Origin: Obrimoposthia wandeli
Lineage: Eukaryota
Assembly (NCBI GenBank): GCA_977020255.1
Contig: CDROCS010005920.1
Span: 1-64,000 of the forward strand
Reading direction: 5' to 3'
DNA length: 64,000 nucleotides
Position 1 is the first letter of the stretch. Each line of letters opens with the position of its first letter. Shown in pieces: positions 17,278 to 61,766 of the stretch. A program made the position numbers and the translations under genes. The notes below the pieces were generated by a model. It was given only the letters and a program-made list of their open reading frames with translations. It was not told the origin of the DNA and did not search any database.

Positions 17278-18018
17278 TTAGCCAAGAATGACCTCAACGC
17301 CACACTTACTAAGAAACGCTAGATCGCTCTCTCCAGCACGATTATCAGTAAGGAGTATAGAAATTTGTTCAGTACTGCCAATTGTCGATGGGAAAATTTG
17401 CCCAAATTTGCTTGAATCAGTCAAAATAATATTGCGGCGCTGCTTGGCTAAAATGATTGAAGCAATCTCTGATCGCATCATATCACGACTGGTGAATCCA
17501 GTATCTTGGTGGAAGCCGTCGACACCAAGGAAAGCTGTACTAAAGTGAATATTTTCGATGCATAGTTTGGTCAATGGCCCAACTAAACTTTCTCCCTGAT
17601 GCTGATAAACTCCGCCAAGTAAAATGATATTGGCAGAGGTGTTGCGAATCAGATTCGCAATGTAAGCAGATGGCGTAATAATAGTGACATCGCCTCGCTC
17701 TGCTAGGATTCTCGCCAATAACGCATTAGCGCTACCGCCTTCGATCAATACGGTTTCGCTTTGCGCGACTAAATCAGCCGCCATATTTGCCAGAGACTGT
17801 TTAATATCAAAACAAACCTCGAGGCGATTATCAATGTCGTCATTTTGTAGTGCAGTTGCCGCGCCATGTACTCGTTTTAAATAATTTTGTTGCTCTAAGA
17901 AATTGAGATCTTGACGAATGGTTACTCCAGATACACCAATAAGATTGGATAGGTCAGTCACCTGGACACGCTTACGATCATTAACGATTTGTAGGATTTC
18001 ATTCTGTCTAGGATTCAT
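17278..18018 (-). CDS. yciT: DeoR/GlpR-family regulator, YciT-like
   Basis: MNPRQNEILQ..HTH GVS.VTIRQDL..LE, VLIEGGS.N, FHFSTAF.G.DG-like sensor motifs. Confidence 0.88.
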   Translation of the reverse strand: MNPRQNEILQIVNDRKRVQVTDLSNLIGVSGVTIRQDLNFLEQQNYLKRVHGAATALQNDDIDNRLEVCFDIKQSLANMAADLVAQSETVLIEGGSANALLARILAERGDVTIITPSAYIANLIRNTSANIILLGGVYQHQGESLVGPLTKLCIENIHFSTAFLGVDGFHQDTGFTSRDMMRSEIASIILAKQRRNIILTDSSKFGQIFPSTIGSTEQISILLTDNRAGESDLAFLSKCGVEVILG

Positions 18019-18063
18019 TTTTGGTTCTCGAAAAGGAAGAAACTCTATTATATAGTCTCTTCC

Positions 18064-18075
18064 TTTCATTTGAAA
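18064..18075. promoter_or_regulatory. Candidate YciT operator TTTCA-TT-TGAAA
   Basis: Palindrome upstream of yciT; same core at 21489 and 23337. Confidence 0.55.
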
Positions 18076-18092
18076 CCTAAGTGCAACTTAAG

Positions 18093-20516
18093 TTATAAAT
18101 CATGTTCTGTACGTGCAATTATGTCATCCTGAGCATCAGGAGATAATGCCGTAAAGAATGCAGAATAACCCGCGACGCGTACAACAAGATCACGGTATTG
18201 CTCTGGGTTTTCTTTTGCTGCTAACAAGGTATCACGCGATACGATATTGTACTGAACATGCCAACCTTTATGGTGGTTAAAGAAAGTGCGAATTAACATT
18301 GAAAGCTTTATCTTATCGTTCTCTGACTCTACTGCGGCGGGGCTTAACTTCTGGTTAAGTAAGACGCCACCAAGAATCTTGTTCGCTTGAATCTTACCTA
18401 CCGAGTTATAAACCGCTGTTGGACCTAAACGATCTGAGCCAGATGATGGACTTGATCCTTCTGCTAATGGTGTTTTTGCTTGGCGGCCATCAGGCGTTGC
18501 CATCGTCGATGCGCCAAATGGAACGTTAGCCGAGATAGATGATGTACCAGCGTAGTAACCACCTCCAATAGGTCCGCGGCCATTACGCGTGTTGACAAAA
18601 TTATCTAGCTCATTAATGTATACTTGGTACGCTTCTACCAGTAGTGAATCGACTGAATCATCATCATTACCAAACTTAGGTGCAAAATTTAGAATGCGTT
18701 GACGAAGCTGCTCTTGCTCTGAGGATCCAAAGTTTTCTGCCAGAGCTTTAGCAAGATCTGGTTGAGATATTTGAGCATCATCGAACACCATGTGCTTAAT
18801 TGCGGCAAGGCTGTTACCAAGGTTTGCAATACCAACTTGTAGGCCTGATACCCAATCGTATTTAGCCCCCCCTTCTTTGACTGTTTTACCTCGTACTAGA
18901 CAATTATCAACTAATGAAGAACAGAAGATATCTTGCACTTGCTGTTCAAGAACAGTATCTACCACTGTATCAATCTCGATAGATTTACGTGTGTAGTAAC
19001 GTACTTGGTCTGCCCAAGATTCCATAATTTCATCAAAGTTGGTAAAGCTGCCTTCTGCTAATGACTTAGTGTGGGGCAGGAATGTCTTACCAGACGTCGT
19101 ATCTTGACCCTTATTTAGAGCTGCAAGCAGGATACGAGCAAAATTTATGAAGCTCATACCCGTACAGCGATAGCCCCACTTCCCAGGAACAGCGGTCTCA
19201 ATACAACCGATTGATGCGTAGTTGTATGCATCTTCTTTTTCAACGCCAAGCTTAATAAATTCAGGAATGACTATTTCATCGTTGTTGAACGCAGGCATAC
19301 CAAAACCACATTTGATTACCTCGATACAGCCCATCAGGAATTCTTGGTTCAGACCTTCGTGGTAACGAACACTTAGATTTGGCTGAGTTGAGCGAAGCTG
19401 ACCACAAGACTCCAGGATTGTCCAAGACAGTTGGTTTACTGCATCTTCTGGTTTATCGTTTTCATTAAGTTTTTGACCACCTATACATACGTTCTGGTAT
19501 AATGGAGAGCCTGCGGATGCTTTTGAGTGTGCGCCAGAGCGGATCTTATTCACTTCTAAAAGTTTTAACCAACAACTTTGTAGTAGCTCAAGTGCAAAAC
19601 CTTTCTTAAGCTTGCCGCTTTCAATGTCTGCAACATAGTAGCGATTTAGAAATTGGTCCATGCGACCAAATGATACTGAATGACCATTCGATTCGATTTG
19701 CAGCATGAGCTGAACGAAGTAGCTTAGCTGTAGTGCTTGCCAAAAGTTTTCTGGTGCGTGGTATGCAACATGGCGACAGTTTTCAGCAATCGTTTCAAGC
19801 TCTGTTTTGCGATCTGCACGAGTCTCTGTTTGTGCCATTTCAGCGGCAAGTGTTGCGTAGCTAGCCATATGACATTGAATAGCTAAAAGAACAATTTCAG
19901 TTGCCTTATAGAATTGCTCTTTTTTAAGACCTTCAAATGTTGAAACATCATTTTCAGTACGGAACAGACGAACTTCTTCGATAAGACCATTCATACCTAG
20001 CTCAAGAATTTTTTCATTATCGACTGCAAGGTGAGCATCGCCAGAGGTCATATTGCCTTCAGCTTTTATGATAGTTGTTGCTAGGATATCTTGTTGTTCA
20101 TCAGTAAATAGACCATAACAACGGTCTTGAACCGTCTTACCATTCCAGTATGGGGTTAATACATGAATGATCTCTTTATCTTCAGCTGTAACACTAAAGC
20201 CTGCACCAGGGCGATCAGCTAAGTCATCAATCTCAGCTTCAATCCAACGTACAGTGTATTCTGGAAAAATTGGCGCTGCGCGTAGTTTGCTTGCTTGGTT
20301 ACCAACAACCAGCTCGTCATTCTTAATCCAAATTGTACGTGTTTCTAAGTGCTCTTTTAGCGCAATTGCACGTTGAATTATTACAGGTTTATCTTCGTTT
20401 TCCTTGTAAGCCTTGGTGTAAGCTTGTGCACGTTCAGTACAAATTGGCGGCGTTAAAATATTAATCAGTTCAGATTTATGCGCTTTGATGCGCTCAGGTA
20501 GGAAATTTAAGTCCAT
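18093..20516 (-). CDS. ybiW: Glycyl-radical enzyme YbiW/PflF type (1,5-anhydroglucitol-6-P ring-opening enzyme by homology)
   Basis: N-terminus closely matches E. coli YbiW (RAAPIFPEYTV.WIE.EIDDLADRPGAGF, KAEGNMTSGDAHLAV); Cys loop SIGCIE; Gly loop RVAGYS. Confidence 0.93.
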   Translation of the reverse strand: MDLNFLPERIKAHKSELINILTPPICTERAQAYTKAYKENEDKPVIIQRAIALKEHLETRTIWIKNDELVVGNQASKLRAAPIFPEYTVRWIEAEIDDLADRPGAGFSVTAEDKEIIHVLTPYWNGKTVQDRCYGLFTDEQQDILATTIIKAEGNMTSGDAHLAVDNEKILELGMNGLIEEVRLFRTENDVSTFEGLKKEQFYKATEIVLLAIQCHMASYATLAAEMAQTETRADRKTELETIAENCRHVAYHAPENFWQALQLSYFVQLMLQIESNGHSVSFGRMDQFLNRYYVADIESGKLKKGFALELLQSCWLKLLEVNKIRSGAHSKASAGSPLYQNVCIGGQKLNENDKPEDAVNQLSWTILESCGQLRSTQPNLSVRYHEGLNQEFLMGCIEVIKCGFGMPAFNNDEIVIPEFIKLGVEKEDAYNYASIGCIETAVPGKWGYRCTGMSFINFARILLAALNKGQDTTSGKTFLPHTKSLAEGSFTNFDEIMESWADQVRYYTRKSIEIDTVVDTVLEQQVQDIFCSSLVDNCLVRGKTVKEGGAKYDWVSGLQVGIANLGNSLAAIKHMVFDDAQISQPDLAKALAENFGSSEQEQLRQRILNFAPKFGNDDDSVDSLLVEAYQVYINELDNFVNTRNGRGPIGGGYYAGTSSISANVPFGASTMATPDGRQAKTPLAEGSSPSSGSDRLGPTAVYNSVGKIQANKILGGVLLNQKLSPAAVESENDKIKLSMLIRTFFNHHKGWHVQYNIVSRDTLLAAKENPEQYRDLVVRVAGYSAFFTALSPDAQDDIIARTEHDL

Positions 20517-20518: not shown

Positions 20519-21418
20519 TTAGCCTCGTATAGTGACGTTGAGTTGAGTATGTTCGTTTGCGTATTGTTGTGCTTTTTTCAATAGTTCTGAATTATTTAGT
20601 GGTTTATCTGAGCACAGGTACGGCATATCAAGTAAACGATATTTGTTGATGCCTAGAGTGTGATAAGGCAGTAAGTGAAGCTCTTTACAGTTTTCAAGTG
20701 AAGCTGCAAAATCGATAATCTCTTTCAGTTCTTCATTGGTATCATTAAAACTTGGAACAACAGGTACACGAATAACGATACGCTTAGCTATTGGCGCTAA
20801 TTTATGAAAATTCTCTTTGATTCGTTTTAACGAGCCTTTTGCCCAGTCTAAAAATTTTTCTTCATCAGTATGTTTTAAATCAACAAGCCAGCAATCAATG
20901 AAAGGTGCTACTTTTTCGACGTTCTTCCAAGGCACGTGCATGCAGGATTCAATCGCTGTCGAAACGTCATTGTCTTTCAGATTTTTCGCAATCTCAGCGA
21001 CAAGGTTTGCTTGCATTAACGGCTCGCCACCAGAGAAAGTAACACCGCCATTACTTTGCTCATAAAACGGGCTATCTTTCATTAGACTATCAAACAGCAT
21101 TTCTGCTTGGGCATCTTCGCCACAAACACTGAGAGCTTGAGTAGGACAAATGTCTCGCAGTGCAATGATCTGCTCGTCACTGATCGCCTTACGATTAATG
21201 ATGACCTTCCCGTTGTCGCGCTGTATAGCGTCACAAGCATTACTACAAAGCTGGCAATGTTCTAAGCAGTTCCGTTCATCAAACAGTAATGAATATTTTT
21301 CACTACGGCTTTCAGGGTTCTGACACCAAGGACAAGCAAGGCTACACCCCTTTAAGAACAAGATAGAGCGAATACCATCGCCATCATGGGTTGAGAATCG
21401 TTGAATGTTGAAATACAT
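20519..21418 (-). CDS. ybiY: GRE activating radical-SAM enzyme YbiY/PflE
   Basis: FNIQRFSTHDGDGIR, CxxxCxxC (CSLACPWC), ferredoxin insert, GGVTFSGGEP. Confidence 0.92.
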   Translation of the reverse strand: MYFNIQRFSTHDGDGIRSILFLKGCSLACPWCQNPESRSEKYSLLFDERNCLEHCQLCSNACDAIQRDNGKVIINRKAISDEQIIALRDICPTQALSVCGEDAQAEMLFDSLMKDSPFYEQSNGGVTFSGGEPLMQANLVAEIAKNLKDNDVSTAIESCMHVPWKNVEKVAPFIDCWLVDLKHTDEEKFLDWAKGSLKRIKENFHKLAPIAKRIVIRVPVVPSFNDTNEELKEIIDFAASLENCKELHLLPYHTLGINKYRLLDMPYLCSDKPLNNSELLKKAQQYANEHTQLNVTIRG

Positions 21419-21486
21419 GCCGCGTACCTTTTATTGCAGCAGAACTTTCTTTTTTTACTCTGCTTTCACTATATGAAATTAACACC

Positions 21487-21500
21487 ACTTCAAATGAAGT
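21487..21500. promoter_or_regulatory. Candidate YciT operator ACTTCA-AA-TGAAGT, with a CRP-like site ATGATATAGATCAAT just beyond
   Basis: Palindrome about 70 bp upstream of ybiY. Confidence 0.55.
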
Positions 21501-21570
21501 CGCGATGATATAGATCAATAAAGTTAAAAGTAACTAGATCTATAGTTATCCCAACAAAAAAACTGCGTTT

Positions 21571-22576
21571 TAATGTAATGAACCAGCCCATCAAACTATA
21601 GTTTTGATTAATAAGTAATTAAGTGGAAGGCAGGGTGATCATTATTAACTTACTGGGTGTTGATTATGATGGGGAATATGTTTTAAAAAAGCGATTATCA
21701 AGAGATGTACTGACTGAATATATCGCTAACACTCCACCATACAAGATCGTCATAGAATTTTGTGGAAGGCCAGAGTTTAACTACATGGCTATATAGTTAA
21801 ACTCATTCGTTCTCAATTTGTAAAACCGTTTGTTAAAAAAATAATGCTGAAGCCATCACGAAACAGCCAGTAGACCATCAGCCGACTTGTTAAAGGCTGC
21901 ACTGCATTGATTAAAGAAATAAGAAGCCTCAAACTTGGGTTATGAAATTACCATTCCTATAGGGGCTACAAAGGTTAAAAAATGTTTTTTGATTATTTCC
22001 AATGAAAATAATGAGCTGACTGGGACCTCTCGTAAGTTCATGAATAATTTCTACAGTAAGTTAGTCCAAATTGAAGACAAATTGAAATATTCAGAAAAGA
22101 AGGTCAAACAGACCTGTAGGAAAAATGAAGGCTACCGCCGACCCCAGTGTCGGGAAATTAACAGCTATGATTTCCGCGGTTCCAAATCCCAATGTATTTA
22201 AGAATAGTCGGCACATGTCCGCATGGCTTAGTACCCAGACAGCATTTTAGCGGAGACAAGCAAACGTTGTTGGGTATAAGCAAGCAAAAAGTGGCAGCCT
22301 AATACACTATATTAGATAGCTTGATATCAACTTTATAGTGGGTATTTCAATAATTTTGCGTTAGTTAATTTTAGATAATTAAACATAGGTCATACTTGCT
22401 TTTCTAAAACTAAAACCTGTTTTGCGATACGGTCCTAGAGCCAATTTTGATAATGGTAGAAGAGTACGGATTTACATCAGGGCACAAATTTAACTTAGAT
22501 GCTGAATATACGACTGCACCTTAGATTATACCAACATCACTAAAAATTAACGTGTAAATAGGAATGGTTCATACAC
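21571..22576 (+). mobile_element. Heavily decayed IS110-family (IS1111 subgroup) element with both ends
   Basis: Left end TAATGTAATGAACC; remnant INLLG.D..VLKKRLSR, FVKPFV; right end GCTGAATATACGACTGCA...GGAATGGTTCATACAC. Confidence 0.7.
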
Positions 22577-22609
22577 TCGTAAATTTTAGGGGGTATTGAG
22601 CTACCCATT

Positions 22610-23135
22610 TTAATCCATCGTTCCACACCAGTGAAGGTAGCTCTTGCACCGTCACCTGATTTCCATCTAAGCATTGATTCATTTTATTTTTCACTCTGCG
22701 GTGGTTTTGTTCAGATACTTGATTGAAAGAATTTCAATTAGACTCAGCATGTGCCCGTTACTCCAAGACCAATATTGATATGATGCAGTGCTAACGTGTT
22801 GGAATGGTTGTCGTAAATAATCACCTTTTCTGGTTTTTAATGTTGCCTTATGGCACTTTTGATTACTTTTTATCTAATTTAATACGCAGTAGAAAATCAA
22901 ACAGCACACCAATCAACCAACGGCTCGATAGCAATATTTCCACTGTTCTCTTACATTTATATACGTTTCCTCATCTGCCACAAAGAAGCTACAAACTTCT
23001 TCTTTCTCCGATCTCTCAACTAAAACAATGGCGCATATTTGAGTGCCTGTCGGTTCAATGTCGAGAATATCTCACTCTGCCATAATCTCTCCGATTTCAC
23101 TATAAGCAAAGGTACTAACGAACAGTCTTGTATAT
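22610..23135 (-). mobile_element. Decayed IS6 type-B remnant
   Basis: Patchy identity to 5787-6479. Confidence 0.75.
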
Positions 23136-23274
23136 GAATTATGAAGGACAGTCTCGGGCTGAGAATGGATTGTCACGCGATTTAACTGGGTTAAAAGATT
23201 CCGTGATCATAATTCATCGAGTCGCGTTGTAAAAAATAAATTATCAATTTTGTAACTAGCATACTCAGTGTTAA

Positions 23275-23336: not shown

Positions 23337-23394
23337 TTCACTTGAAATAAAAAATGCCATTAAACTTACAATTGAAGCTTTGATCGAAATCAAA
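23337..23394. promoter_or_regulatory. TTCA-CT-TGAA operator candidate (23337-23346) and CRP-like site TTTGA-N6-TCAAA (23379-23394)
   Basis: Direct motif reading. Confidence 0.55.
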
Positions 23395-23468: not shown

Positions 23469-24860
23469 ATGAACATATTTAGCGAAATGCAAAAAATGGG
23501 ACGGAGTCTGATGTTACCGGTAGCTTGTATGCCAGCTGCAGGTATTCTATTAGGTATCGGCGGTAATTCTGAAGTGGCTAAGTTTCTGCCAGATTTAGTC
23601 GCTCAGATTATGACAGAAGCTGGGTTAGGCGTATTTTCCAATATGGCTCTTTTATTTGCTATTGGGGTCTCATTAGGTTTTTCAAAAAATGATGGCGTTG
23701 CAGCGCTAGCTGCTGTACTAGGCTACTTAACTATGTCAAGAGTGCTAGCGGTTATAGCACCAGGAACAGATACAGGTGTATTTGGTGGAGTTATTATGGG
23801 TTTAGCAGCAGCCGAACTGTTCAATCGATATCATACTATTAACTTACCAACCTATTTAGGATTTTTTGGAGGTAAGCGATTTGTTCCAATAATTACATCT
23901 TTAGCTGCGTGTGTAATAGCCGCGATAATAGCTGTTATTTGGAAACCTATTGGATCCGGTATTGCGGAATTTTCACACTGGGCAGCATACCAATCACCCA
24001 ACATTGCATTTGGAATTTACGGTGTTGTGGAACGTTCACTTATTCCTTTTGGGTTACATCATATTTGGAACTCAGCATTCTTTTATGAAGTGGGTCAATT
24101 CACGACAGCCGCTGGTGAAATAGTAAAAGGAGAAATCCCACGCTACTTAGCTGGCGATCCAACGGCAGGAAACTTAGCAGGTGGCTATTTATTCAAGATG
24201 TTTGGACTTCCAGCAGCTTGCCTTGCGATGTATGTTACAGCGAAGAAAGAAAATAAAATATTAGTAGCATCAATCCTTGGTTCAGCGGCTTTAACATCTT
24301 TCCTAACTGGCATTACTGAACCGATTGAGTTTGCTTTTATGTTTGTAGCACCATTACTTTATGTCGTTCATGCATTATTGTCTGGATTAGCATTCGTAGT
24401 GCTTATCGAACTCGGAGTAAAACATGGTACTACATTCAGCCATGGTCTATTTGATTTTACTCTACTATATGGAAACTCAACTAAAGGCTGGTTAATACCT
24501 GTCATCGGCTTAGCATATGCGGCATTATATTTTGTGGTTTTTGTTGCTCTAATTAAAGCATTTAATTTAAAAACGCCAGGACGAGAAACTACAACAGAGC
24601 AGATTAGAGAAAAATTCGATACTTCAAGTGATGGCTTAGCAAAAGAAATTCTTCTTGCGTTTGGAGAAAAAGATAACATCAAAGATTTGGATGCGTGTAT
24701 CACTCGCCTTCGTATTACCGTATTAGATAAGTCTAAGGTAAATGTACTACAACTAAAAAACCTTGGTGCTGCTGGTGTTTTTGAAAATGACTGCAATTTT
24801 CAAGCTGTTTTTGGTACACACTCTGAGATAATCAAAGGACAAATTGAAAATCTCACTTAG
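23469..24860 (+). CDS. PTS glucose-family EIICB (PtsG paralog)
   Basis: MQKMGRSLMLPVA.MPAAGILLG, LGFFGGKRFVPI, PFGLHHIW, GITEPIEF, EIIB DACITRLR. Confidence 0.93.
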   Translation: MNIFSEMQKMGRSLMLPVACMPAAGILLGIGGNSEVAKFLPDLVAQIMTEAGLGVFSNMALLFAIGVSLGFSKNDGVAALAAVLGYLTMSRVLAVIAPGTDTGVFGGVIMGLAAAELFNRYHTINLPTYLGFFGGKRFVPIITSLAACVIAAIIAVIWKPIGSGIAEFSHWAAYQSPNIAFGIYGVVERSLIPFGLHHIWNSAFFYEVGQFTTAAGEIVKGEIPRYLAGDPTAGNLAGGYLFKMFGLPAACLAMYVTAKKENKILVASILGSAALTSFLTGITEPIEFAFMFVAPLLYVVHALLSGLAFVVLIELGVKHGTTFSHGLFDFTLLYGNSTKGWLIPVIGLAYAALYFVVFVALIKAFNLKTPGRETTTEQIREKFDTSSDGLAKEILLAFGEKDNIKDLDACITRLRITVLDKSKVNVLQLKNLGAAGVFENDCNFQAVFGTHSEIIKGQIENLT

Positions 24861-35137: not shown

Positions 35138-35138
35138 T

Positions 35139-55424: not shown

Positions 55425-56504
55425 GTGAATGACCTCATCAAAATCTTAAAAAACACTAGGCAACACCTAATGACAGGTGTTTCACATATGATCCCGTTTG
55501 TTGTTGCCGGCGGCATCTTATTGGCAGCATCTGTAATGCTTTATGGTGAAGGTGCTGTACCTGAAAATGGAACCTGGCTTCATGACTTATTCTTTATCGG
55601 TGTCGCCGGCTTCCAACTTATGGTTCCTTTTCTGGCCGCTTATATTGGCTACTCGATTGCTGACCGCTCAGCATTAGCACCATCGGCCATTGCCGCCTTT
55701 GTCGGTGCAAATATGTACAACACTGGCTTTTTCGGTGCCATTTTTGCTGGCCTGCTCGGTGGTATTGTTGTTTTCTATTTGAAGAAGATAAAAGTACCGT
55801 CATTTGCACGTTCAGTGATGCCAATCTTCGTCATTCCTATCATTGGTACTTTTATTACTGCTGGTGCAATTGTCTGGGGGATCGGTGCACCTATAGGTGC
55901 AATGACAGCATCATTGACTGAATTCCTAAAAGAAATGCAAGGCTCCAGCATTGTAGTGTTGGCTATCATCATAGGGTTGATGATCTCCTTTGATATGGGC
56001 GGACCGGTTAATAAAGTCGCCTATGCGTTCGTTATTCTTTGTGTAGGTGAAGGCCTTTACGATGTTGCCGGTATTAGTTCCGTTGCTGTCGCAGTTCCAT
56101 CTGTAGGTATGGGCCTCGCCACCTTCCTAGGTAAAAAATTGTATGACGATAGTGAGCGAGAAGCTGGTCGTGCTTCCATTCTGATGGGTACGATGGGTAT
56201 CACTGAAGGGGCTATCCCATTTGCTGCCGCCGATCCGTTACGTGTACTTCCTTCAATCATGATTGGTACCGCTTGCGGTGCTGCGACTGCCGCCGTATTA
56301 GGAGTTAAAAGCTATGCCGCCTGGGGTGGCCTGATTGTGTTACCCGTGGTTGATGGCCGCTTTGGGTTCATCATTGCACTGGCTGTTGGTTCGGTTTCAA
56401 CTGCATTAATCGTGAATTTTCTTAAGAAATATACTCGTCAGACACAATCCAAAGTAGACCCAAACCACTCAGGTGAACTGGACCTAGATATTGATATTGG
56501 TTAA
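55425..56504 (+). CDS. frwC: PTS fructose-like EIIC
   Basis: RQHLMTGVSHMIPFVVAGG, FDMGGPVNK, GITEGAIPFAAADP. Confidence 0.92.
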   Translation: MNDLIKILKNTRQHLMTGVSHMIPFVVAGGILLAASVMLYGEGAVPENGTWLHDLFFIGVAGFQLMVPFLAAYIGYSIADRSALAPSAIAAFVGANMYNTGFFGAIFAGLLGGIVVFYLKKIKVPSFARSVMPIFVIPIIGTFITAGAIVWGIGAPIGAMTASLTEFLKEMQGSSIVVLAIIIGLMISFDMGGPVNKVAYAFVILCVGEGLYDVAGISSVAVAVPSVGMGLATFLGKKLYDDSEREAGRASILMGTMGITEGAIPFAAADPLRVLPSIMIGTACGAATAAVLGVKSYAAWGGLIVLPVVDGRFGFIIALAVGSVSTALIVNFLKKYTRQTQSKVDPNHSGELDLDIDIG

Positions 56505-56583
56505 GGCTTCCAGTCACATTTTCCAGCGTTCTCTAATCGCTGGGTACAAAACAAAATTTATTGCTACTTATTGAAAGGTAAAT

Positions 56584-56916
56584 ATGATGAAAAAAGTTAT
56601 TGCTGTTACCGCTTGCCCATCTGGCGTTGCTCATACCTATATGGCTGCAGAAGCAATTGAAACTTCAGCTAAGGCTAAAGGCTGGGAATGCAAGGTAGAA
56701 ACCCAAGGCTCAATTGGTATTGAAAATGAATTGACCGACGATGAAATAACTGCGGCAGATATTGTGATCCTCACCAAAGATATTGGTATCAAAGGCGAAG
56801 ATCGCTTCCAGGGTAAAACCGTTGTCCGCGTTGGTGTGAGCGATGCAGTTAAACGTGCAGATGCTGTAATGGCTAAAATTGAAGCGCACTTTACCAAAGT
56901 AGATGCAAACGCTTAA
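56584..56916 (+). CDS. frwB: PTS fructose-like EIIB
   Basis: AVTACPSGVAHTYMAAE, KVETQGSIG. Confidence 0.92.
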   Translation: MMKKVIAVTACPSGVAHTYMAAEAIETSAKAKGWECKVETQGSIGIENELTDDEITAADIVILTKDIGIKGEDRFQGKTVVRVGVSDAVKRADAVMAKIEAHFTKVDANA

Positions 56917-57017: not shown

Positions 57018-59327
57018 ATGAGTACAGCCCGGATCAATCACCTTAAATCTTCCCTTTTTGATGCCAAGCGTGAGATTTCTCTCGAACGAGCACTTCTATA
57101 CACAGAAAGTCATCAGCAGACCGACGGTGAACCAACACTCATTCGTCGAGCTAAAGCTACATCTCATGTGATGGACAATGTTGAGATCTCCATTCGGGAA
57201 AATGAGCTCCTCGCAGGTAACCGCACAGTAAAACCTCGCGTAGGGATAGTGTCACCTGAAATGGACCCCTATTGGATCGACAAAGAGCTGGATATTTTTC
57301 CTTCTCGCCCACAAGACAAGTTTGATATCTCCGAGCAAGACAAAAATATCTATCGCCAGCAGTTGCTACCGTATTGGTCACAACGCTCGATGAAGGATTT
57401 TATCAATAGTCAATTTCCTGATGAGATCCGAGAAGCAACCAGCCAGAAAGTATTTTCAGTTAACCAGACTGACAAAGGCCAAGGGCACATCATCATTGAC
57501 TATGATCGTCTGTTGGAAAATGGTTTGGGTCGCCTTACCGATGAGATGACAACGTTAGCAACACAAAATCCAGGTAACCATTTCTACACGGCAGTTCAGT
57601 TGTTACTCGAAGCAAGCACCCGACACATCTGCCGCTATGAGCAATTAGCCCAGGAGATGGCTGATAGCCTTGAGCATGAAGGAAAAATGGAACGCGCTGC
57701 TGAATTAAAGCACATTGCTGAAATCTCGGCCAAAATAGCTATTGAGCCGCCAGAAACATTTTATGAAGCATGCCAGTTATTCTGGTACATGAACATTATT
57801 CTGCAATACGAATCCAATGCGAGTTCTCTTTCTCTGGGCCGTTTTGATCAGTACATGTTGCCATTTTATCGCGCATCACTAGATGCAGGTGAAGATCCAG
57901 CCTTCCTGCAAGAGTTACTGGAAAGTCTGTGGGTTAAGATGAATGACATTGTGCTGTTGCGTTCGACAAACAGTGCCAAGTTCTTTGCCGGGTTTCCAAC
58001 CGGATACACGATATTGCTTGGTGGATTGAACGAAACAGGTCATAGCGCCGTCAACGAACTATCTACTCTATGTCTGGACTCTTACCAAAATATTCAACTG
58101 CCTCAGCCAAACTTAGGTGTGCGTATCAACGAACTGATCGACCGTCAGTTCTTACAAAAAACCGCTGAAACCATCCGATTGGGGACCGGTATACCTCAAA
58201 TATTTAATGACGAAGTGGTGGTACCTGCCTTCCTGAACCGTGGTGTCTCTCTCGAAGATGCCCGTGACTATTCTGTCGTGGGTTGTGTGGAATTATCTAT
58301 TCCGGGTAAGACTTATGGCTTGCATGATATTGCGATGTTTAATCTACTTAAAGTCATGGAGCTGGTTCTTAAGCGTAATCAACATAACTCGGACGTGAGT
58401 TATGACAGCTTGGTTGAACAAATTCGTGACGATATCTGCCACTACGTAAAACTGATGGCTGAAGGCTCGAATATTTGTGATATTGGCCATCGAGATTGGG
58501 CTCCAGTACCACTTCTTTCCTCTTTCATCAATGACTGTATCGAAAATGGACAAGATATTACTAACGGTGGAAGTCGTTATAACTTCTCGGGCGTACAGGG
58601 GATAGGTATCGCTAACCTGTCAGATTCACTTCATGCACTGAAGAAATTTGTGTTCGAAGAGAAACGCATGAGCTACGCAGATTTCATTGAAACGCTGGAC
58701 TGCAATTTCGAAAATGAAGGTGGAGACAAAGTCCGTGCTCGACTGATCAATCGTTACGAGAAGTTCGGTAATGACATCGATGATGTAGACATGATCAGTG
58801 CCGACTTATTACGCCTGTTCTGTAAAGAAGTCGAGCAATACGATAATCCACGTGGTGGTAAATTTACCCCCGGTTCGTATACCGTCTCAGCCCACATACC
58901 ACTCGGGCAAGTGGTGGGTGCTACACCTGATGGACGGTTAGCGAAAGAGCAGCTGGCCGACGGCGGTCTGTCACCTATGCTCGGTCAAGATCAGACCGGA
59001 CCGACCGCGGTACTCAAGTCAGTCAGCAAACTTGATAACTATCTGTTGTCCAATGGCAGCCTGCTCAACGCCAAGTTTACGCCAAGCACACTTGAAGGTG
59101 AGCAAGGCATTAACAAGCTGTGTGATTTCTTACATGCATTCATGAAGCTTAAGTTACAGCACATTCAGTTTAACGTGCTCAACGCTGACACGCTCAAAAA
59201 AGCACAAGAAAATCCAGGAGATTATGCTGGTTTGGTGGTACGAGTTGCCGGGTACAGTGCGTTTTTTGTTGAGTTGTCCAAAGAAATCCAGGACGACATT
59301 ATTCGTCGAACTGCCCATGAGCTGTAA
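57018..59327 (+). CDS. pflD: Glycyl-radical enzyme PflD type (1,5-anhydromannitol-6-P ring-opening enzyme by homology)
   Basis: REISLERALLYT.SH.QT.GEP, NQTDKGQGHII, VVGCVELS, RVAGYSAFFVEL. Confidence 0.93.
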   Translation: MSTARINHLKSSLFDAKREISLERALLYTESHQQTDGEPTLIRRAKATSHVMDNVEISIRENELLAGNRTVKPRVGIVSPEMDPYWIDKELDIFPSRPQDKFDISEQDKNIYRQQLLPYWSQRSMKDFINSQFPDEIREATSQKVFSVNQTDKGQGHIIIDYDRLLENGLGRLTDEMTTLATQNPGNHFYTAVQLLLEASTRHICRYEQLAQEMADSLEHEGKMERAAELKHIAEISAKIAIEPPETFYEACQLFWYMNIILQYESNASSLSLGRFDQYMLPFYRASLDAGEDPAFLQELLESLWVKMNDIVLLRSTNSAKFFAGFPTGYTILLGGLNETGHSAVNELSTLCLDSYQNIQLPQPNLGVRINELIDRQFLQKTAETIRLGTGIPQIFNDEVVVPAFLNRGVSLEDARDYSVVGCVELSIPGKTYGLHDIAMFNLLKVMELVLKRNQHNSDVSYDSLVEQIRDDICHYVKLMAEGSNICDIGHRDWAPVPLLSSFINDCIENGQDITNGGSRYNFSGVQGIGIANLSDSLHALKKFVFEEKRMSYADFIETLDCNFENEGGDKVRARLINRYEKFGNDIDDVDMISADLLRLFCKEVEQYDNPRGGKFTPGSYTVSAHIPLGQVVGATPDGRLAKEQLADGGLSPMLGQDQTGPTAVLKSVSKLDNYLLSNGSLLNAKFTPSTLEGEQGINKLCDFLHAFMKLKLQHIQFNVLNADTLKKAQENPGDYAGLVVRVAGYSAFFVELSKEIQDDIIRRTAHEL

Positions 59328-60195
59328 CGATGTGCCTGCAGCGACCCAAAAACACAATGAGCAAATGGGGCGTGTATTTAATATTCAGCGCTATTCGCTC
59401 AATGATGGCCAGGGTATTCGCACTGTAGTGTTTTTCAAGGGATGCCCGCTGAGTTGTCCTTGGTGTGCTAACCCGGAATCACGCTCACCGAAACAACAAG
59501 TGATCAAGCGGGAGGCAAAGTGCATTCATTGTGACGTTTGTGTACTTGATACAAAAGAAAGCATTGATGAGTGCCCAAGTGGTGCCCTAGAGGTTATCGG
59601 TAACGACATGACGTTAGATGAGATTGTCGCTGAAATTGAAAAAGACAGCGTCTTTTTCCGCACCTCCGGTGGTGGCGTTACCCTGTCTGGGGGCGAGGTA
59701 ATGGCTCAAGCCCCTTTTGTTATCGAACTCGCGAAACGTCTCAAAGCGTTGAATTATCCAGTCGCGATAGAGACCACGGGACAAGGCAATCAAAAGCATT
59801 TATTAGCATTGGGAAATTTGTGCAATGAAGTGCTGTTTGACTTCAAAATCATGAATGCAGAACGAGCAAAATCTATCACGGGGATTGATTTGCCAAAGGT
59901 ACTCGATAACTTTAAGGCATTGATTAGAGCGGGTGTGAATGTAACCCCTCGTTTACCTCTCATTCCAGGCTATACCCTAGATTTGATAAATGTAGATCAG
60001 GTATTACGATTCTTACAACCTTTTGAACTCAAAGAGATGCATTTACTACCCTTTCACCAATACGGGGAAAACAAATACGACAATTTAAATTTAAATTACT
60101 TATTAAAAGACGTACGGGTTCCATCTCCAAGTGAAATTGAAGCGATCCGCCGTCACGTAGAAGCCGCAGGCTATCAAATCATTATTGGAGGTTAA
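59317..60195 (+). CDS. pflC: GRE activating radical-SAM enzyme
   Basis: FNIQRYSLNDGQGIR, CPLSCPWC, DECPSGAL, GGGVTLSGGE; overlaps the pflD stop. Confidence 0.92.
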   Translation: MSCNDVPAATQKHNEQMGRVFNIQRYSLNDGQGIRTVVFFKGCPLSCPWCANPESRSPKQQVIKREAKCIHCDVCVLDTKESIDECPSGALEVIGNDMTLDEIVAEIEKDSVFFRTSGGGVTLSGGEVMAQAPFVIELAKRLKALNYPVAIETTGQGNQKHLLALGNLCNEVLFDFKIMNAERAKSITGIDLPKVLDNFKALIRAGVNVTPRLPLIPGYTLDLINVDQVLRFLQPFELKEMHLLPFHQYGENKYDNLNLNYLLKDVRVPSPSEIEAIRRHVEAAGYQIIIGG

Positions 60196-60200
60196 TTCTG

Positions 60201-61061
60201 ATGAAAAAGAAAATTTTACTTACGGGTGCCAGCGGTTTTTTCGGTACGCGATTTATTAAAGCGTACCAGCACCAATTTGAGGTTCATGCAACAGATGTTA
60301 AACAATTAGACATCACAAATAACGAACAAGTGATGACAATTTTTGCTGACATCAAGCCTGACTATGTTATCCATGCCGCTGCCATTGCCGTTACGGACTT
60401 TTGCAATAAAAAACCAGAGCTTGCCCATAAAGTCAATGTACAAGGCGCGATCAACGTTGCCAAAGCTTGTCGTAAAATGGGCAGCAAACTGGTCTTTATC
60501 AGTACCGAACAGGTGTTCAACGGTAACAAAGAGCTTGGTCCCTATACGGAAAACGACGTTCCTGAACCAGATACAGTTTACGGCCAAAACAAATTAGAAG
60601 CGGAAGGAAAATTAAAAGAGATTTTAGATGAGCTTTGGACTATTCGATTCACTTGGTTATTCGGTTTACCTGAACGCCAGACTAATATCAATCCAAATGT
60701 AGTTTGGAATACGCTGCAAAGCCTTATTTCAGGGACAAAAATGTTAGAGCGGACCGATGAATTCCGTGGCCTGACCTATGTTCACGAACTAATTGATCAG
60801 TTTGATAAAATATTTGAAATCCCTTACGGCACCTACCATGTTGGTGCCCAGAATGACCTAAGCCGCTATGAGATTACGCGTCACATTCTAGTTAAGCTTG
60901 GGCAAGAAGATCGCTTAGACCAACTACTTGAAGGTATCGATACCCCAACTGTACGTGATATTCGCCTTGATACATCTAAGATCGCCTCACACGGCATTAC
61001 TTTTACTGACAGCCGTGAAGCAATCAATAACTGCTTGGGTGAATTTAGTTTTAATATTTGA
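60201..61061 (+). CDS. RmlD-like extended SDR NAD(P)-dependent reductase
   Basis: TGASGFFG, HAAA...D.C, ISTEQVF.G, YGQNK (YxxxK), G.YHV. Confidence 0.85.
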   Translation: MKKKILLTGASGFFGTRFIKAYQHQFEVHATDVKQLDITNNEQVMTIFADIKPDYVIHAAAIAVTDFCNKKPELAHKVNVQGAINVAKACRKMGSKLVFISTEQVFNGNKELGPYTENDVPEPDTVYGQNKLEAEGKLKEILDELWTIRFTWLFGLPERQTNINPNVVWNTLQSLISGTKMLERTDEFRGLTYVHELIDQFDKIFEIPYGTYHVGAQNDLSRYEITRHILVKLGQEDRLDQLLEGIDTPTVRDIRLDTSKIASHGITFTDSREAINNCLGEFSFNI

Positions 61062-61088
61062 TTATTTTTAATATTTGGAGTTTAAACA

Positions 61089-61766
61089 ATGATTTACATG
61101 CTAGACACTGCAAACCTTGACGCTATCGCTAAAGCTGTAGATTTTTATCCTCTTGCAGGGGTTACAACCAACCCATCGATTATTGCGAAAGAAAATCGCC
61201 CACTACGTGATATTTTATTCGATATCCGCGAAATTATCGGTCACTTGCGAATGTTACATGTGCAAGTAATTGGTAAAACAGCAGATGTGATGGTGAAGGA
61301 AGCCAATATACTGCATAATATTGATGAAAACTTAATAATCAAAGTACCTGTAACAACTGAAGGTATGAAAGCTATTCGTTTGCTTGCAGCAGATGGTTTT
61401 CGAGTAACAGCAACTGCAATTCTTACTCCACAACAAGCACTTATGGCTGCAGTTGCGGGAGCTGAGTTTTTAGCCCCTTATGTTAATCGCTTAGATAACA
61501 TCTGCGGTGATGGTGTAAAAGTTACGAAAGAAATGGTTCAGCTACTTGACCATTACAACCTGAGTTCAAAAGTTTTGGCTGCATCATTCAAAAATGTTCA
61601 GCAAGTTCAAGATGTAGCAAAGGTTGGTGCGCAATCCATTACTGTCGCCCCTGACGTATTTGATTTACTCATTCAGCATCCATTAACTAATTCAGGTGTT
61701 GCTAGTTTTACCAGTGACTGGGAAAGTGTTTACGGCAAAGGAACGACAATTTTAGATATAATCTAG
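61089..61766 (+). CDS. fsa: Fructose-6-phosphate aldolase (FSA, not transaldolase)
   Basis: LDTAN, GVTTNPS, IKVP Schiff-base Lys; FSA-type Gln (HVQV) and Tyr (APYVNR) instead of transaldolase Glu/Phe. Confidence 0.9.
   Translation: MIYMLDTANLDAIAKAVDFYPLAGVTTNPSIIAKENRPLRDILFDIREIIGHLRMLHVQVIGKTADVMVKEANILHNIDENLIIKVPVTTEGMKAIRLLAADGFRVTATAILTPQQALMAAVAGAEFLAPYVNRLDNICGDGVKVTKEMVQLLDHYNLSSKVLAASFKNVQQVQDVAKVGAQSITVAPDVFDLLIQHPLTNSGVASFTSDWESVYGKGTTILDII

What the first reader, a model, noticed from the sequence alone, without database searches (positions are those of the whole stretch)
17278..61766. Both radical-glycolysis GREs on one mobile island, converging on a single aldolase and GldA
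Seen: intact ybiW-ybiY and pflD-pflC (single-Cys CIE/CVE loops, RVAGY, CxxxCxxC activases), their PTS parts, one FSA and one gldA. Established: E. coli YbiW and PflD ring-open 1,5-anhydroglucitol-6-P and 1,5-anhydromannitol-6-P to 1-deoxyfructose-6-P. FsaA/B cleave it to hydroxyacetone + G3P and GldA makes 1,2-propanediol. 1,5-anhydrofructose, the precursor, comes from alpha-1,4-glucan lyases of red algae and fungi. Inference: a horizontally mobile, merged anaerobic pathway for both anhydro-polyols in a marine Vibrionaceae. The ybiW module has no fsaA and would depend on the fsa about 40 kb away.
Basis: partly seen in the sequence, partly recalled or inferred. Interest (0 to 1): 0.85.

Follow-up and report, generated by a model that had tools for sequence, protein, structure and literature searches.

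The report
Two anhydro-sugar radical enzyme modules, IS-scrambled
The window carries intact Vibrionaceae versions of the two known E. coli glycyl-radical "anhydroglycolysis" gene sets (YbiW and PflD). Both are common in marine vibrios, and here insertion sequences have brought them near each other and partly scrambled them, so this is not one purpose-built mobile island.

Summary
All the named genes are present and intact, with the stated motifs. YbiW (18093-20516) is 68% identical to E. coli YbiW. PflD (57018-59327) is 74% identical to E. coli PflD and passes NCBI's PflD equivalog model.

- Each module is separately widespread in Vibrionaceae. In Vibrio sp. HN007 the two lie about 1 Mb apart.
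- fsa and gldA belong to the PflD locus, as in E. coli. Nothing has been merged.
- The ybiW module's own aldolase is a secondary loss. 47 of 48 orthologous loci keep a divergent fsa within 600 bp of ybiY. Here that position holds IS110- and IS6-type debris.
- frwD and its AraC regulator sit 17 kb from the pflD operon.
- At least 17 IS-derived segments cover about 16% of the window. I found no integrase, tRNA or island borders.

So this is an IS-made mosaic, and I found nothing that shows it moves as one island.

- An SDR reductase between pflC and fsa, and a Gfo/HbpS-like pair, are conserved in aquatic PflD modules, including those of Pseudovibrio and Aeromonas.
- The only perfect FNR box in the window lies upstream of a PtsG-like IIBC.

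These are candidate entry steps for 1,5-anhydrofructose and 1,5-anhydroglucitol. I rate it a new member of a known kind, of modest interest.

The parts
15710..16835 (-). IS5-family element (transposase 15757-16737) bordering the ybiW module on its yciT side
   Evidence: NCBIfam transpos_IS5_2, 240 bits. A deleted direct copy lies at 26624-27239.
17278..18069 (-). YciT-like DeoR-family regulator, last gene of the ybiY-ybiW-yciT unit
   Evidence: NCBIfam trans_reg_YciT, 310 bits, below the 450 cutoff. It is syntenic in most Vibrionaceae relatives at 64-89% identity.
18093..20516 (-). YbiW ortholog: glycyl radical enzyme, predicted 1,5-anhydroglucitol-6-P C-O lyase (isomerase)
   Evidence: PDB 8ID7 (E. 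coli YbiW) scores 1270 bits against 585 for the next enzyme class. It is 68% identical to E. coli YbiW over its full length. Motifs: GC438IE440 and RVAGY780.
20519..21418 (-). YbiY-type GRE activase (radical SAM)
   Evidence: TIGR02494, 322 bits. CSLACPWC at residue 25. 49% identical to E. coli YbiY.
21419..21560 (.). Retained part of the conserved fsa|ybiY regulatory region, with an FNR-like box at 21505-21518
   Evidence: Alignment with five relatives. The box has one mismatch to TTGAT-N4-ATCAA. Homology ends before the position where fsa starts in relatives.
21656..23167 (.). IS110-like and IS6-like debris at the position where relatives have the divergent fsaA-type aldolase
   Evidence: Repeats D14, D16, D18 and D20. 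tblastn remnants at 21932-22075 (IS110) and 22567-23167 (IS6). No fsa remnant. 47 of 48 relatives have fsa here.
23380..23393 (+). Perfect FNR consensus TTGATCGAAATCAA, 76 bp upstream of the IIBC gene
   Evidence: It is the only zero-mismatch match in the 64 kb window. The sequence was read.
23469..24860 (+). PtsG-like glucose-family PTS IIBC paralog (463 aa), candidate 1,5-anhydroglucitol importer and kinase
   Evidence: TIGR02002, 600.5 bits, above the 591.8 cutoff. PRK11089, 634.5 bits, below the 647 cutoff. It belongs to a 462-466 aa subfamily found in some Vibrionaceae. An 89% homolog sits next to fsa, ybiY and yciT in contigs L072 and L073.
24922..25787 (-). Degenerate IS6-family copy, in direct orientation with 12581-13404 and 42445-43211
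   Evidence: Repeats D1-D4. tblastn gives 85% aa identity to the intact transposase at 12586-13404.
42445..43211 (-). Frameshifted IS6-family remnant abutting frwD
43389..43727 (+). FrwD-type PTS IIB, displaced from the pflD operon
   Evidence: NCBIfam PRK10427, 136 bits (cutoff 153). 50% identical to E. coli FrwD. In all 7 related PflD loci and in E. coli, frwD lies at the operon end: after fsa in the relatives, after pflC in E. coli.
43704..44582 (-). YijO-like AraC-family regulator, convergent with frwD as in E. coli
   Evidence: 55% identical to E. coli YijO. 55-64% identical to the AraC gene next to frwD in L064, L071, L075 and L076.
48659..49747 (-). Glycerol dehydrogenase (GldA family), predicted hydroxyacetone to 1,2-propanediol step
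   Evidence: NF006941, 542 bits, above the 336 cutoff. The GldA equivalog scores 524 bits, below the 700 cutoff. 57% identical to E. coli GldA.
49827..50756 (-). KpsF/GutQ-family SIS+CBS sugar-phosphate isomerase; role unknown
   Evidence: TIGR00393, 328 bits, above the 204 cutoff. An SIS/CBS gene is also present in the PflD loci L065 and L071.
50753..51241 (-). HbpS/GlcG-like (heme-degrading domain) protein, paired with the Gfo oxidoreductase
   Evidence: NF002696, 200 bits. Conserved in 6 of 7 related PflD loci at 57-77%.
51282..52415 (-). Gfo/Idh/MocA oxidoreductase (the true start is probably Met32, near 52322); candidate ring-ketone (1,5-anhydrofructose) reductase
   Evidence: PRK11579, 350 bits. 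The best PDB match is B. subtilis YvaA at 320 bits; 1,5-anhydrofructose reductase 2GLX/4KOA scores only 47-50 bits. Conserved in L065, L071, L075 and L076.
52449..54959 (-). PtsA/FrwA-type fused HPr-EI-IIA(Fru)
   Evidence: TIGR01417 plus fruA IIA and HPr domains. 66% identical to E. coli PtsA.
55425..56916 (+). FrwC (IIC, 55425-56504) and FrwB (IIB, 56584-56916)
   Evidence: Equivalogs PRK10478 (576 bits) and PRK10474 (184 bits), both above cutoff.
57018..59327 (+). PflD ortholog: glycyl radical enzyme, predicted 1,5-anhydromannitol-6-P C-O lyase
   Evidence: Equivalog NF007437, 1464 bits, above the 1109 cutoff. PDB 8YJO scores 1290 bits and 8ID0 1043 bits. 74% identical to E. coli PflD. Motifs: GC423VE425 and RVAGY742.
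59224..60195 (+). PflC activase (the true start is probably near 59317)
   Evidence: Equivalog NF007483, 421 bits, above the 326 cutoff, aligned from residue 32. CPLSCPWC.
60201..61061 (+). RmlD-like extended SDR between pflC and fsa; candidate keto-sugar(-phosphate) reductase
   Evidence: TIGR01214, 153 bits, below cutoff. GASGFFG and YGQNK motifs are intact. Present at this position in 7 of 7 aquatic PflD loci at 68-78%, absent in E. coli.
61089..61766 (+). FSA-family aldolase of the PflD operon, the only one in the window
   Evidence: Equivalog NF009299, 220.7 bits, above the 214 cutoff. The E. coli-type PRK12653 scores 232 bits, below the 306 cutoff. 67-72% identical to the fsa of other PflD operons, but only 39-43% to E. 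coli FsaA/FsaB and to ybiW-linked fsa.
62660..63080 (+). About 83% identical copy of the ptsA|frwC intergenic region, including the RBS and first codons of frwC, with no gene behind it
   Evidence: Repeats D13 and D15. Alignment A1. No frwC remnant by tblastn.

Best explanation
The window holds two separate, already-known gene modules for anaerobic breakdown of 1,5-anhydro-hexitols. They lie 36 kb apart in a variable region that is heavily reworked by insertion sequences.

Module A is ybiY-ybiW-yciT. It is the Vibrionaceae form of the E. coli fsaA|ybiY-ybiW locus. It has lost its divergent aldolase gene to an IS-associated deletion, but it keeps its promoter region with an FNR-like box.

Module B is the 'aquatic' form of the E. 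coli gldA-fsaB-ptsA|frwCB-pflDC-frwD|yijO locus. Its order is SIS, HbpS-like, Gfo, PtsA | FrwC, FrwB, PflD, PflC, SDR, FSA. GldA sits at one end, and FrwD with the YijO-like regulator has been displaced 17 kb.

Inferred mechanism:
1. PTS uptake and phosphorylation gives AG6P and AM6P.
2. Under anoxia the activated GREs open the rings to 1-deoxyfructose-6-P.
3. The single FSA splits that into glyceraldehyde-3-P and hydroxyacetone.
4. GldA reduces hydroxyacetone to 1,2-propanediol.

Both GREs give the same product, so one aldolase can in principle serve both. Here that is a by-product of gene loss, not an assembled island.

What is shown here: gene presence, orthology, motifs, synteny, and the IS scars. 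What is inferred: substrates, flux, regulation, and the sharing of the aldolase.
For: - Orthology.
- E. coli locus maps.
- Biochemistry of YbiW and PflD: PMC13450708 (section 5.7) and PMC12441222 (section 5.1).
- The canonical fsa|ybiY-ybiW(-yciT) arrangement is present in 47 of 48 orthologous loci.
- The window keeps about 140 bp of the shared regulatory region and then turns into IS110 and IS6 debris.
- The PflD operon order frwC-frwB-pflD-pflC-SDR-fsa-frwD is identical in 7 of 7 relatives. In the window frwD and AraC instead sit next to an IS6 remnant at 42.4-44.6 kb.
- In Vibrio sp. HN007 the two modules lie about 1 Mb apart on one replicon. In V. hannami they are on different contigs, more than 200 kb apart.
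- At least 17 IS-derived segments cover at least 10.5 kb of the window.
- No tRNA gene is present.
Against: - No experiment has been done. Substrate specificity is inferred from 68-74% identity to the E. coli enzymes.
- The substrate-contacting residues beyond the Cys-x-Glu loop were not checked one by one, because the primary paper was not available in the library.
- The window FSA is a divergent lineage, about 40% identical to E. coli FsaA and FsaB. Its activity on 1-deoxyfructose-6-P is inferred from its operon position only.
- The relatives were fetched with only 10 kb flanks, so a 36-kb spacing in other species would be missed, except in the two genomes where both positions are known.
- The source genome was not found, so the replicon type and the rest of the gene content are unknown.
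Confidence: 0.62

Rival explanations
1. The 17-62 kb stretch is one horizontally mobile island. It was selected as a unit, and in it the two anhydro-polyol routes have been merged onto one aldolase and one GldA.
For: - Both modules lie within 44 kb, and IS6-family copies in direct orientation sit at 12.6, 24.9 and 42.4 kb.
- The modules are horizontally mobile elsewhere: a V. europaeus plasmid, and Pseudovibrio and Aeromonas.
- The window contains only one fsa and one gldA.
Against: - No integrase, tRNA or terminal repeats define a unit.
- The IS copies are only 79-93% alike and are mostly broken, so they are not a recent compound transposon.
- IS density is just as high outside the proposed island, at 1-17 kb.
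- The intervening 25 kb carries unrelated genes (VolA lipase, EAL, regulators, MCP) and has 28-39% GC.
- In other genomes the modules are far apart.
- fsa and gldA are native parts of the PflD locus.
Confidence: 0.1
2. Module A is a stranded remnant on its way to decay. Without its own aldolase, and cut off from native neighbours by IS activity, it no longer supports growth on 1,5-anhydroglucitol. In that case the apparent 'convergence' has no physiological meaning.
For: - The fsa that 47 of 48 relatives keep has been lost.
- IS debris lies directly upstream.
- The region is full of broken transposases and shows other rearrangements, such as the displaced frwD and yijO and the orphan promoter copy at 62.7 kb.
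- The distal fsa sits in an operon that is probably controlled by a different regulator (YijO-like).
Against: - YbiW, YbiY and YciT are full-length with all catalytic motifs. YbiW is 93% identical to its best relative.
- The promoter region with its FNR-like box is retained.
- A PtsG-like IIBC with a perfect FNR box lies next door.
- V. albus also lacks the adjacent fsa.
Confidence: 0.18
3. The marine enzymes act on sugar phosphates other than AG6P and AM6P, for example other anhydro- or deoxy-hexitol phosphates from algal polysaccharides. The E. coli assignments would then not transfer.
For: - Extra genes absent from E. coli sit in the PflD locus: SDR, Gfo, HbpS-like and SIS/CBS.
- The FSA lineage is divergent.
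- The IIBC is a distinct paralog family.
Against: - Identity to the E. coli enzymes is 68-74% over the full length, with near-identical Cys-loop and Gly-loop neighbourhoods.
- PflD exceeds NCBI's equivalog cutoff.
- All PTS parts and the regulator are orthologous to E. coli's.
Confidence: 0.1

Closest known systems
E. coli fsaA | ybiY-ybiW locus (YbiW = 1,5-anhydroglucitol-6-phosphate C-O lyase; PDB 8ID7)
   Same: The GRE is 68% identical and the activase 49%. The Cys-x-Glu loop and RVAGY are the same, and the gene order activase-then-GRE is the same.
   Different: - The divergent fsaA is missing here, replaced by IS debris.
- A YciT-like DeoR regulator follows ybiW, as in other Vibrionaceae; E. 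coli has ybiV there.
- A PtsG-like IIBC lies 2 kb upstream.
E. coli gldA-fsaB-ptsA | frwC-frwB-pflD-pflC-frwD | yijO locus (PflD = 1,5-anhydromannitol-6-phosphate C-O lyase; PDB 8YJO, 8ID0)
   Same: All nine gene types are present and orthologous: PflD 74%, PflC 53%, PtsA 66%, FrwC 64%, FrwB 76%, FrwD 50%, YijO 55% and GldA 57%.
   Different: - fsa lies downstream of pflC and belongs to a different FSA lineage (39-41% identity).
- Four extra genes are present: SDR, Gfo, HbpS-like and SIS/CBS.
- frwD and yijO are displaced 17 kb.
'Aquatic-type' PflD module of V. harveyi, Vibrio sp. HN007, V. hannami, Aeromonas veronii and Pseudovibrio exalbescens (uncharacterised; seen in loci L064, L068, L071, L075, L076)
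   Same: The core is the same: HbpS-like, Gfo, PtsA | FrwC, FrwB, PflD, PflC, SDR, FSA, at 57-89% aa identity. V. harveyi also has SIS/CBS and a GldA-like Fe-ADH.
   Different: - In all of those loci frwD follows fsa directly, and in four of the five the AraC gene follows frwD.
- In the window this pair sits on the other side of the locus, behind PhyH, MCP and gldA.
- The window gldA is only about 50% identical to their Fe-ADH.
Vibrio europaeus plasmid pVeu-CECT8426 ybiW module
   Same: yciT-ybiW-ybiY at 78% nucleotide identity and 82-91% aa identity.
   Different: The plasmid copy keeps the divergent fsa right next to ybiY, and no pflD module is nearby.

Membership tests
YbiW-type GRE isomerase (AG6P C-O lyase) | PFL-like GRE with a C-terminal glycyl-radical motif (RVxG[FWY]) | tested here: met
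   TIGR01774, 1113 bits. RVAGY at residue 780.
YbiW-type GRE isomerase (AG6P C-O lyase) | Cys loop with a single Cys and a Glu two residues later (E. coli C441/E443, PMC13450708) | tested here: met
   IGC438IE440TAV aligns with E. coli IGC441IE443TAV.
YbiW-type GRE isomerase (AG6P C-O lyase) | Closer to characterised YbiW than to any other characterised GRE class | tested here: met
   8ID7 and 8YJN score 1270 bits, against 585 for glycerol dehydratase and 481 for PflD.
YbiW-type GRE isomerase (AG6P C-O lyase) | Adjacent cognate activase and divergent FSA aldolase | tested here: inconclusive
   The activase is present. The aldolase is absent, although 47 of 48 relatives have it.
YbiW-type GRE isomerase (AG6P C-O lyase) | Converts AG6P to 1-deoxyfructose-6-P | not testable with these tools
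   Needs an enzyme assay.
PflD-type GRE isomerase (AM6P C-O lyase) | Passes the curated equivalog model for E. coli PflD | tested here: met
   NF007437, 1463.7 bits, above the 1109 cutoff.
PflD-type GRE isomerase (AM6P C-O lyase) | Cys-x-Glu loop (C431/E433 in 8ID0) and glycyl-radical motif | tested here: met
   VGC423VE425 aligns with the 8ID0 and 8YJO loops. RVAGY at 742.
PflD-type GRE isomerase (AM6P C-O lyase) | Embedded in the Frw fructose-like PTS operon together with PflC | tested here: met
   The order ptsA | frwC frwB pflD pflC is as in E. coli.
Fructose-6-phosphate aldolase (FSA) | Passes a curated FSA model and not a transaldolase model | tested here: met
   NF009299, 220.7 bits, above the 214 cutoff. 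Two other FSA models fall below cutoff: TIGR00875 (228 against 246) and the E. coli-type PRK12653 (232 against 306). Transaldolase models score 48 bits or less.
Fructose-6-phosphate aldolase (FSA) | Cleaves 1-deoxyfructose-6-P to hydroxyacetone and G3P | not testable with these tools
   Inferred only from its position in the pflD operon in the window and in 7 relatives.
GldA (L-1,2-propanediol / glycerol dehydrogenase) | Passes the curated model | tested here: inconclusive
   The subfamily model NF006941 is passed (542 against 336). The GldA equivalog NF047954 is not (524 against 700). Identity to E. coli GldA is 57%.
Genomic island or integrative mobile element carrying both modules | Integrase or recombinase, tRNA or att-type borders, or identical flanking IS copies that delimit one unit | tested here: not met
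   There is no tRNA and no integrase among the annotated ORFs. The flanking IS6 and IS5 copies are 79-93% alike and mostly degenerate. They bracket sub-segments, not the whole stretch.
Genomic island or integrative mobile element carrying both modules | The same block present as a unit in other genomes | tested here: not met
   In 48 YbiW loci and 7 PflD loci, none has the other module within 8-10 kb. In HN007 the two are about 1 Mb apart, and in V. hannami they are on separate contigs. A 36-kb spacing elsewhere is not fully excluded.

The most novel reading that the evidence does not exclude

- The RmlD-like SDR is fixed between pflC and fsa in 8 of 8 aquatic PflD operons.
- The Gfo/Idh/MocA + HbpS-like pair also sits next to the YbiW module in two Vibrio species.
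- One or both of these would reduce 1,5-anhydrofructose, or its 6-phosphate made by the Frw PTS, to AM6P or AG6P.
- The PtsG-like IIBC paralog with the perfect FNR box would be a dedicated 1,5-anhydroglucitol transporter of the YciT regulon.

This would link red-algal and fungal alpha-1,4-glucan lyase products to bacterial fermentation to 1,2-propanediol.
Probability: 0.25. Interest if true: 0.55.

Novelty: new member of a known kind. Interest (0 to 1): 0.3.

Why it matters
If the assignments hold, the recently described 'anhydroglycolysis' route is not confined to gut enterobacteria. It would be standard equipment in many marine Vibrionaceae, and it is exchanged as a module with Aeromonas and even an alphaproteobacterium.

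The window itself mainly shows how IS activity reshuffles such modules: loss of one aldolase, and displacement of a PTS subunit and its regulator.

The more useful lead is comparative. A conserved SDR and a Gfo/HbpS-like pair inside the aquatic PflD module, and an FNR-boxed PtsG paralog, are concrete and testable candidates for the steps that bring 1,5-anhydrofructose and 1,5-anhydroglucitol into the pathway. The literature I could reach does not assign those steps.

Tried and rejected
- **fsa pseudogene next to ybiY or frwD.** I looked for a degraded fsa in 21418-23469 and upstream of frwD. None was found.
- **Source genome.** I looked up the exact YbiW protein in the assembly collection and found no record. 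The best relatives in the genome collection are 93% identical or less.
- **Plasmid origin.** Only the ybiW module (V. europaeus, 78%) and IS copies match plasmid records. The PflD locus has no plasmid match. There is no evidence for or against a plasmid.
- **Gfo protein as a 1,5-anhydrofructose reductase ortholog.** Rejected. AFR (2GLX, 4KOA) scores only 47-50 bits, against 320 for B. subtilis YvaA. I therefore offer it only as a functional candidate.
- **A shared YciT operator motif (TTTCATTTGAAA) upstream of ybiY, yciT and the IIBC.** Matches exist at 18064, 21488 and 23336, but the count across the window (40 against 24 expected) is too close to chance to use.
- **PDB 9GPI, the best SDR match.** No paper was found.
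- **The primary paper (Ma et al.).** It is not in the searchable library, so I could not do a residue-by-residue check of the substrate pocket.

Full report
**What is there**

ORF listing and family searches give the following map.

| Coordinates | Strand | Feature |
|---|---|---|
| 89-1225 | + | IS66 transposase |
| about 1084-3188 | | group II intron-like remnant |
| 4935-5624 | + | IS6-family transposase |
| 5787-6479 | - | IS6-family transposase |
| 7410-9927 | + | glyoxalase and GMC oxidoreductase cassette |
| 10118-10812 | | broken IS6 |
| 11807-12595 | + | truncated IS91 |
| 12586-13404 | - | third IS6 type |
| 14154-15116 | + | DUF2860 |
| 15757-16737 | - | IS5 transposase |
| 17278-18069 | - | module A: yciT-like DeoR regulator |
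| 18093-20516 | - | module A: YbiW |
| 20519-21418 | - | module A: YbiY |
| 21.6-23.2 kb | | IS110 and IS6 debris |
| 23469-24860 | + | PtsG-like IIBC |
| 24922-25787 | - | IS6 remnant |
| 26624-27239 | - | IS5 remnant |
| 28950-31382 | + | VolA/Pla-1 lipase |
| 31927-32625 | + | LuxR-type HTH |
| 33149-33622 | + | IS91 fragment |
| 33985-36902 | - | EAL gene plus four orphan ORFs in a 28% GC block |
| 37578-37880 | + | IS110 fragment |
| 38044-40297 | + | DUF6506, AraC, methyltransferase |
| 40301-41249 | | IS6 and IS91 fragments |
| 41709-42176 | - | MarR |
| 42445-43211 | - | IS6 remnant |
| 43389-43727 | + | FrwD |
| 43704-44582 | - | YijO-like AraC |
| 45249-46013 | - | PhyH |
| 46180-46308 | | IS6 scar |
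| 46418-48304 | - | MCP |

Module B then runs as follows: gldA 48659-49747(-), SIS/CBS 49827-50756(-), HbpS-like 50753-51241(-), Gfo 51282-52415(-), PtsA 52449-54959(-), FrwC 55425-56504(+), FrwB 56584-56916(+), PflD 57018-59327(+), PflC 59224-60195(+), RmlD-like SDR 60201-61061(+) and FSA 61089-61766(+). The window contains no N and no tRNA gene.

**Checking the observation**

- **GRE 1 is a YbiW ortholog.**
  - The PDB chains of E. coli YbiW (8ID7, 8YJN) score 1270 bits, against 585 for the next class.
  - Full-length identity to E. coli YbiW is 68%.
  - The Cys loop IGC438IE440 aligns with E. coli C441/E443, the residues named in PMC13450708.
- **GRE 2 is a PflD ortholog.**
  - It passes NCBI's equivalog model (1464 bits against a 1109 cutoff).
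  - It scores 1290 bits against E. coli PflD 8YJO and 1043 against 8ID0, and it is 74% identical to E. coli PflD.
- **Motifs.** Both GREs end in RVAGY, and both activases have CxxxCxxC.
- **PTS parts and regulator.** PtsA, FrwC, FrwB, FrwD and the AraC regulator are 50-76% identical to their E. coli counterparts.
- **Aldolase and dehydrogenase.** tblastn finds only one FSA-family gene and one glycerol dehydrogenase in the window.

The primary paper was not in the library.

**Module A compared with relatives**

A scan of one genome per species returned 62 loci. About 50 are orthologs at 77-93% aa identity, from Vibrio, Photobacterium, Psychromonas, Endozoicomonas and Corallincola.

Of the 48 with enough flank, 47 have the arrangement fsa(-) | ybiY-ybiW(+), with the aldolase within 600 bp of ybiY, usually followed by yciT. 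That is the E. coli fsaA|ybiY-ybiW layout. The V. europaeus megaplasmid copy has it too.

In the window, about 140 bp upstream of ybiY still aligns with relatives. This stretch includes a TTGAT-N4-ATCAA-type box. Homology then stops, and the next 1.6 kb consists of IS110-like and IS6-like fragments with no trace of fsa. The missing aldolase is therefore a lineage-specific, IS-associated loss.

**The PtsG-like IIBC**

- It is flanked by IS6 remnants on both sides.
- It is not a conserved neighbour of ybiW. Only two relatives have a PtsG-like gene nearby, and those matches are weak.
- It belongs to a 462-466 aa paralog family found in some Vibrionaceae. Ordinary 480-aa PtsG proteins are only 57-58% identical to it.
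- In two metagenome contigs, its 89% homolog lies in the order fsa(-) | ybiY(+), yciT(-) | IIBC(+). In Photobacterium chitinilyticum an 80% homolog sits in a sucrose-like cluster.
- The only perfect FNR consensus in the 64 kb lies 76 bp upstream of it.

A link to the anaerobic 1,5-AG route is plausible but not established.

**Module B compared with relatives**

PflD homologs at 78-88% identity are common in Vibrio. I examined seven contexts: HN007, V. hannami, V. harveyi, two metagenome contigs, Aeromonas veronii and the alphaproteobacterium Pseudovibrio exalbescens.

- All seven share the order PtsA | FrwC-FrwB-PflD-PflC-SDR-FSA-FrwD.
- An HbpS-like gene sits beside PtsA in six of the seven, paired with Gfo in four. 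An AraC gene follows FrwD in four.
- V. harveyi additionally has SIS/CBS and a GldA-like Fe-ADH.

So the window's gene content is the normal 'aquatic' version of the E. coli locus gldA-fsaB-ptsA|frwCB-pflDC-frwD|yijO. fsa and gldA are native to this locus, and E. coli too has a single gldA.

Two things are unusual here:
- FrwD and the AraC gene are not behind fsa. They lie 17 kb away, next to an IS6 remnant.
- An 83% copy of the ptsA|frwC intergenic region, with the RBS and first codons of frwC, lies orphaned at 62660-63080.

The window FSA passes one curated FSA model (NF009299). It is only 39-43% identical to E. coli FsaA and FsaB and to ybiW-linked FSAs.

**Is it one mobile island?**

- At least 17 IS-derived segments cover at least 10.5 kb, or 16% of the window. 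They lie inside and outside the proposed coordinates alike.
- IS6-family copies at 12.6, 24.9 and 42.4 kb, and IS5 copies at 15.7 and 26.6 kb, are in direct orientation. They are only 79-93% alike and mostly degenerate.
- They bracket sub-segments, not the whole stretch.
- There is no integrase, no tRNA and no pair of terminal repeats around the whole stretch.
- The 25 kb between the modules carries unrelated genes at 28-39% GC. The modules themselves are at 42-46% GC.
- In Vibrio sp. HN007 the two modules are about 1 Mb apart on one 2.15-Mb replicon. In V. hannami they are on different contigs, more than 200 kb apart.
- At least seven Vibrio species carry both GREs, so co-occurrence in one genome is ordinary.

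The modules are horizontally mobile as modules, as the plasmid, Pseudovibrio and Aeromonas copies show. A single 44-kb island is not supported.

**Mechanism**

The steps below are inferred, not shown.
1. Under anoxia, 1,5-AG enters by a glucose-family PTS, possibly the IIBC here together with a Crr encoded elsewhere. 1,5-AM enters by the Frw PTS. Each is taken up as its 6-phosphate.
2. YbiW and PflD, activated by YbiY and PflC, open the rings to 1-deoxyfructose-6-P.
3. The FSA of the pflD operon cleaves that to G3P and hydroxyacetone.
4. GldA reduces hydroxyacetone to 1,2-propanediol.

Because the two GREs give one product, one aldolase suffices chemically. Whether it is expressed when only 1,5-AG is present is unknown, and another fsa elsewhere in the genome cannot be excluded.

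**A lead beyond the finding**

- The RmlD-like SDR has intact GxxGxxG and YxxxK motifs. It occupies the same slot in all eight aquatic operons and is absent from E. coli.
- A Gfo + HbpS-like pair accompanies PflD in five lineages. It also sits beside the YbiW module in Vibrio sp. EA2 and YIC-376.
- The closest solved relative of the Gfo protein is B. subtilis YvaA. From memory, that enzyme is an NADPH-dependent inosose/scyllo-inositol dehydrogenase.

These proteins are reasonable candidates for reducing 1,5-anhydrofructose, or its 6-phosphate, to the GRE substrates. This is a hypothesis only.

**Verdict**

The 'single merged mobile island' reading is not supported. This is a new member of a known kind, in an IS-scrambled setting, and of modest interest.

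Noticed in passing
window 5734-10868: Two inverted IS6-family copies (5734-6545 intact, 10064-10868 broken) share 295-nt arms that are 100% identical. They bracket a 3.5-kb cargo of glyoxalase, a Gluconate_2-dh3-like protein and a GMC oxidoreductase (7410-9927). The structure looks like a composite transposon, and it is the most recent-looking IS event in the window.
   Followed up: partly
window 1084-3188: This stretch, next to the IS66 transposase, is about 79-80% identical to group II intron (ltrA) regions of Marinomonas, Alteromonas and Pseudoalteromonas plasmids. No full reverse-transcriptase ORF remains.
   Followed up: no
window 62660-63080: An orphan copy, 83% identical, of the ptsA|frwC intergenic region, including the RBS and the first codons of frwC. 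No coding sequence follows it. It may be a relic of a second Frw/PflD module or of the rearrangement that displaced frwD and yijO.
   Followed up: partly
window 23380-23393 and 21505-21518: A perfect FNR consensus, TTGATCGAAATCAA, lies 76 bp upstream of the PtsG-like IIBC; it is the only perfect one in 64 kb. A one-mismatch box lies 87 bp upstream of ybiY, at a position where relatives have the perfect box. No such box (at one mismatch or fewer) occurs in the ptsA|frwC intergenic region.
   Followed up: partly
window 33985-36902: A block with 28% GC holds an EAL-domain gene and four ORFs with no family match. It is flanked by IS91 and IS110 fragments and is compositionally foreign to the rest of the window.
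   Followed up: no
L072 1-4488 and L073 73-3722 (metagenome contigs): A variant arrangement, fsa(-) | ybiY(+), yciT(-) | PtsG-like IIBC(+), with no GRE gene between the activase and the regulator. It is either a module that lost ybiW or one whose GRE is encoded elsewhere.
   Followed up: partly
L007 5505-8133 and L021 5427-8037: In Vibrio sp. EA2 and YIC-376, a Gfo/Idh/MocA + HbpS-like pair with its own DeoR regulator lies immediately beside the fsa|ybiY-ybiW module. This mirrors the pair found in PflD loci.
   Followed up: partly
L012 992-7600; L004 17466-20800: Vibrio rhodolitus has a third, distant GRE (25-28% identity) with its activase and FrwC/FrwB-like PTS genes next to its YbiW module. 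V. hannami has a second GRE and activase (33% identity) 5 kb downstream of YbiW. Clustering of several sugar-type GREs may be common in vibrios.
   Followed up: no
L075 (Pseudovibrio exalbescens) and L076 (Aeromonas veronii): The complete aquatic-type PflD module is present in an alphaproteobacterium and in Aeromonas at 48-83% aa identity to the window genes. In Aeromonas it lies beside a DDE transposase fragment. This is clear inter-class horizontal transfer of the module.
   Followed up: partly
window 48659-49747 versus L053 6967: The window gldA is 77% identical to a gldA that sits next to a different, distant GRE (38% to YbiW and PflD) in Thaumasiovibrio. It is only about 50% identical to the Fe-ADH of other Vibrio PflD loci. 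It may therefore have joined this locus from another GRE cluster.
   Followed up: no
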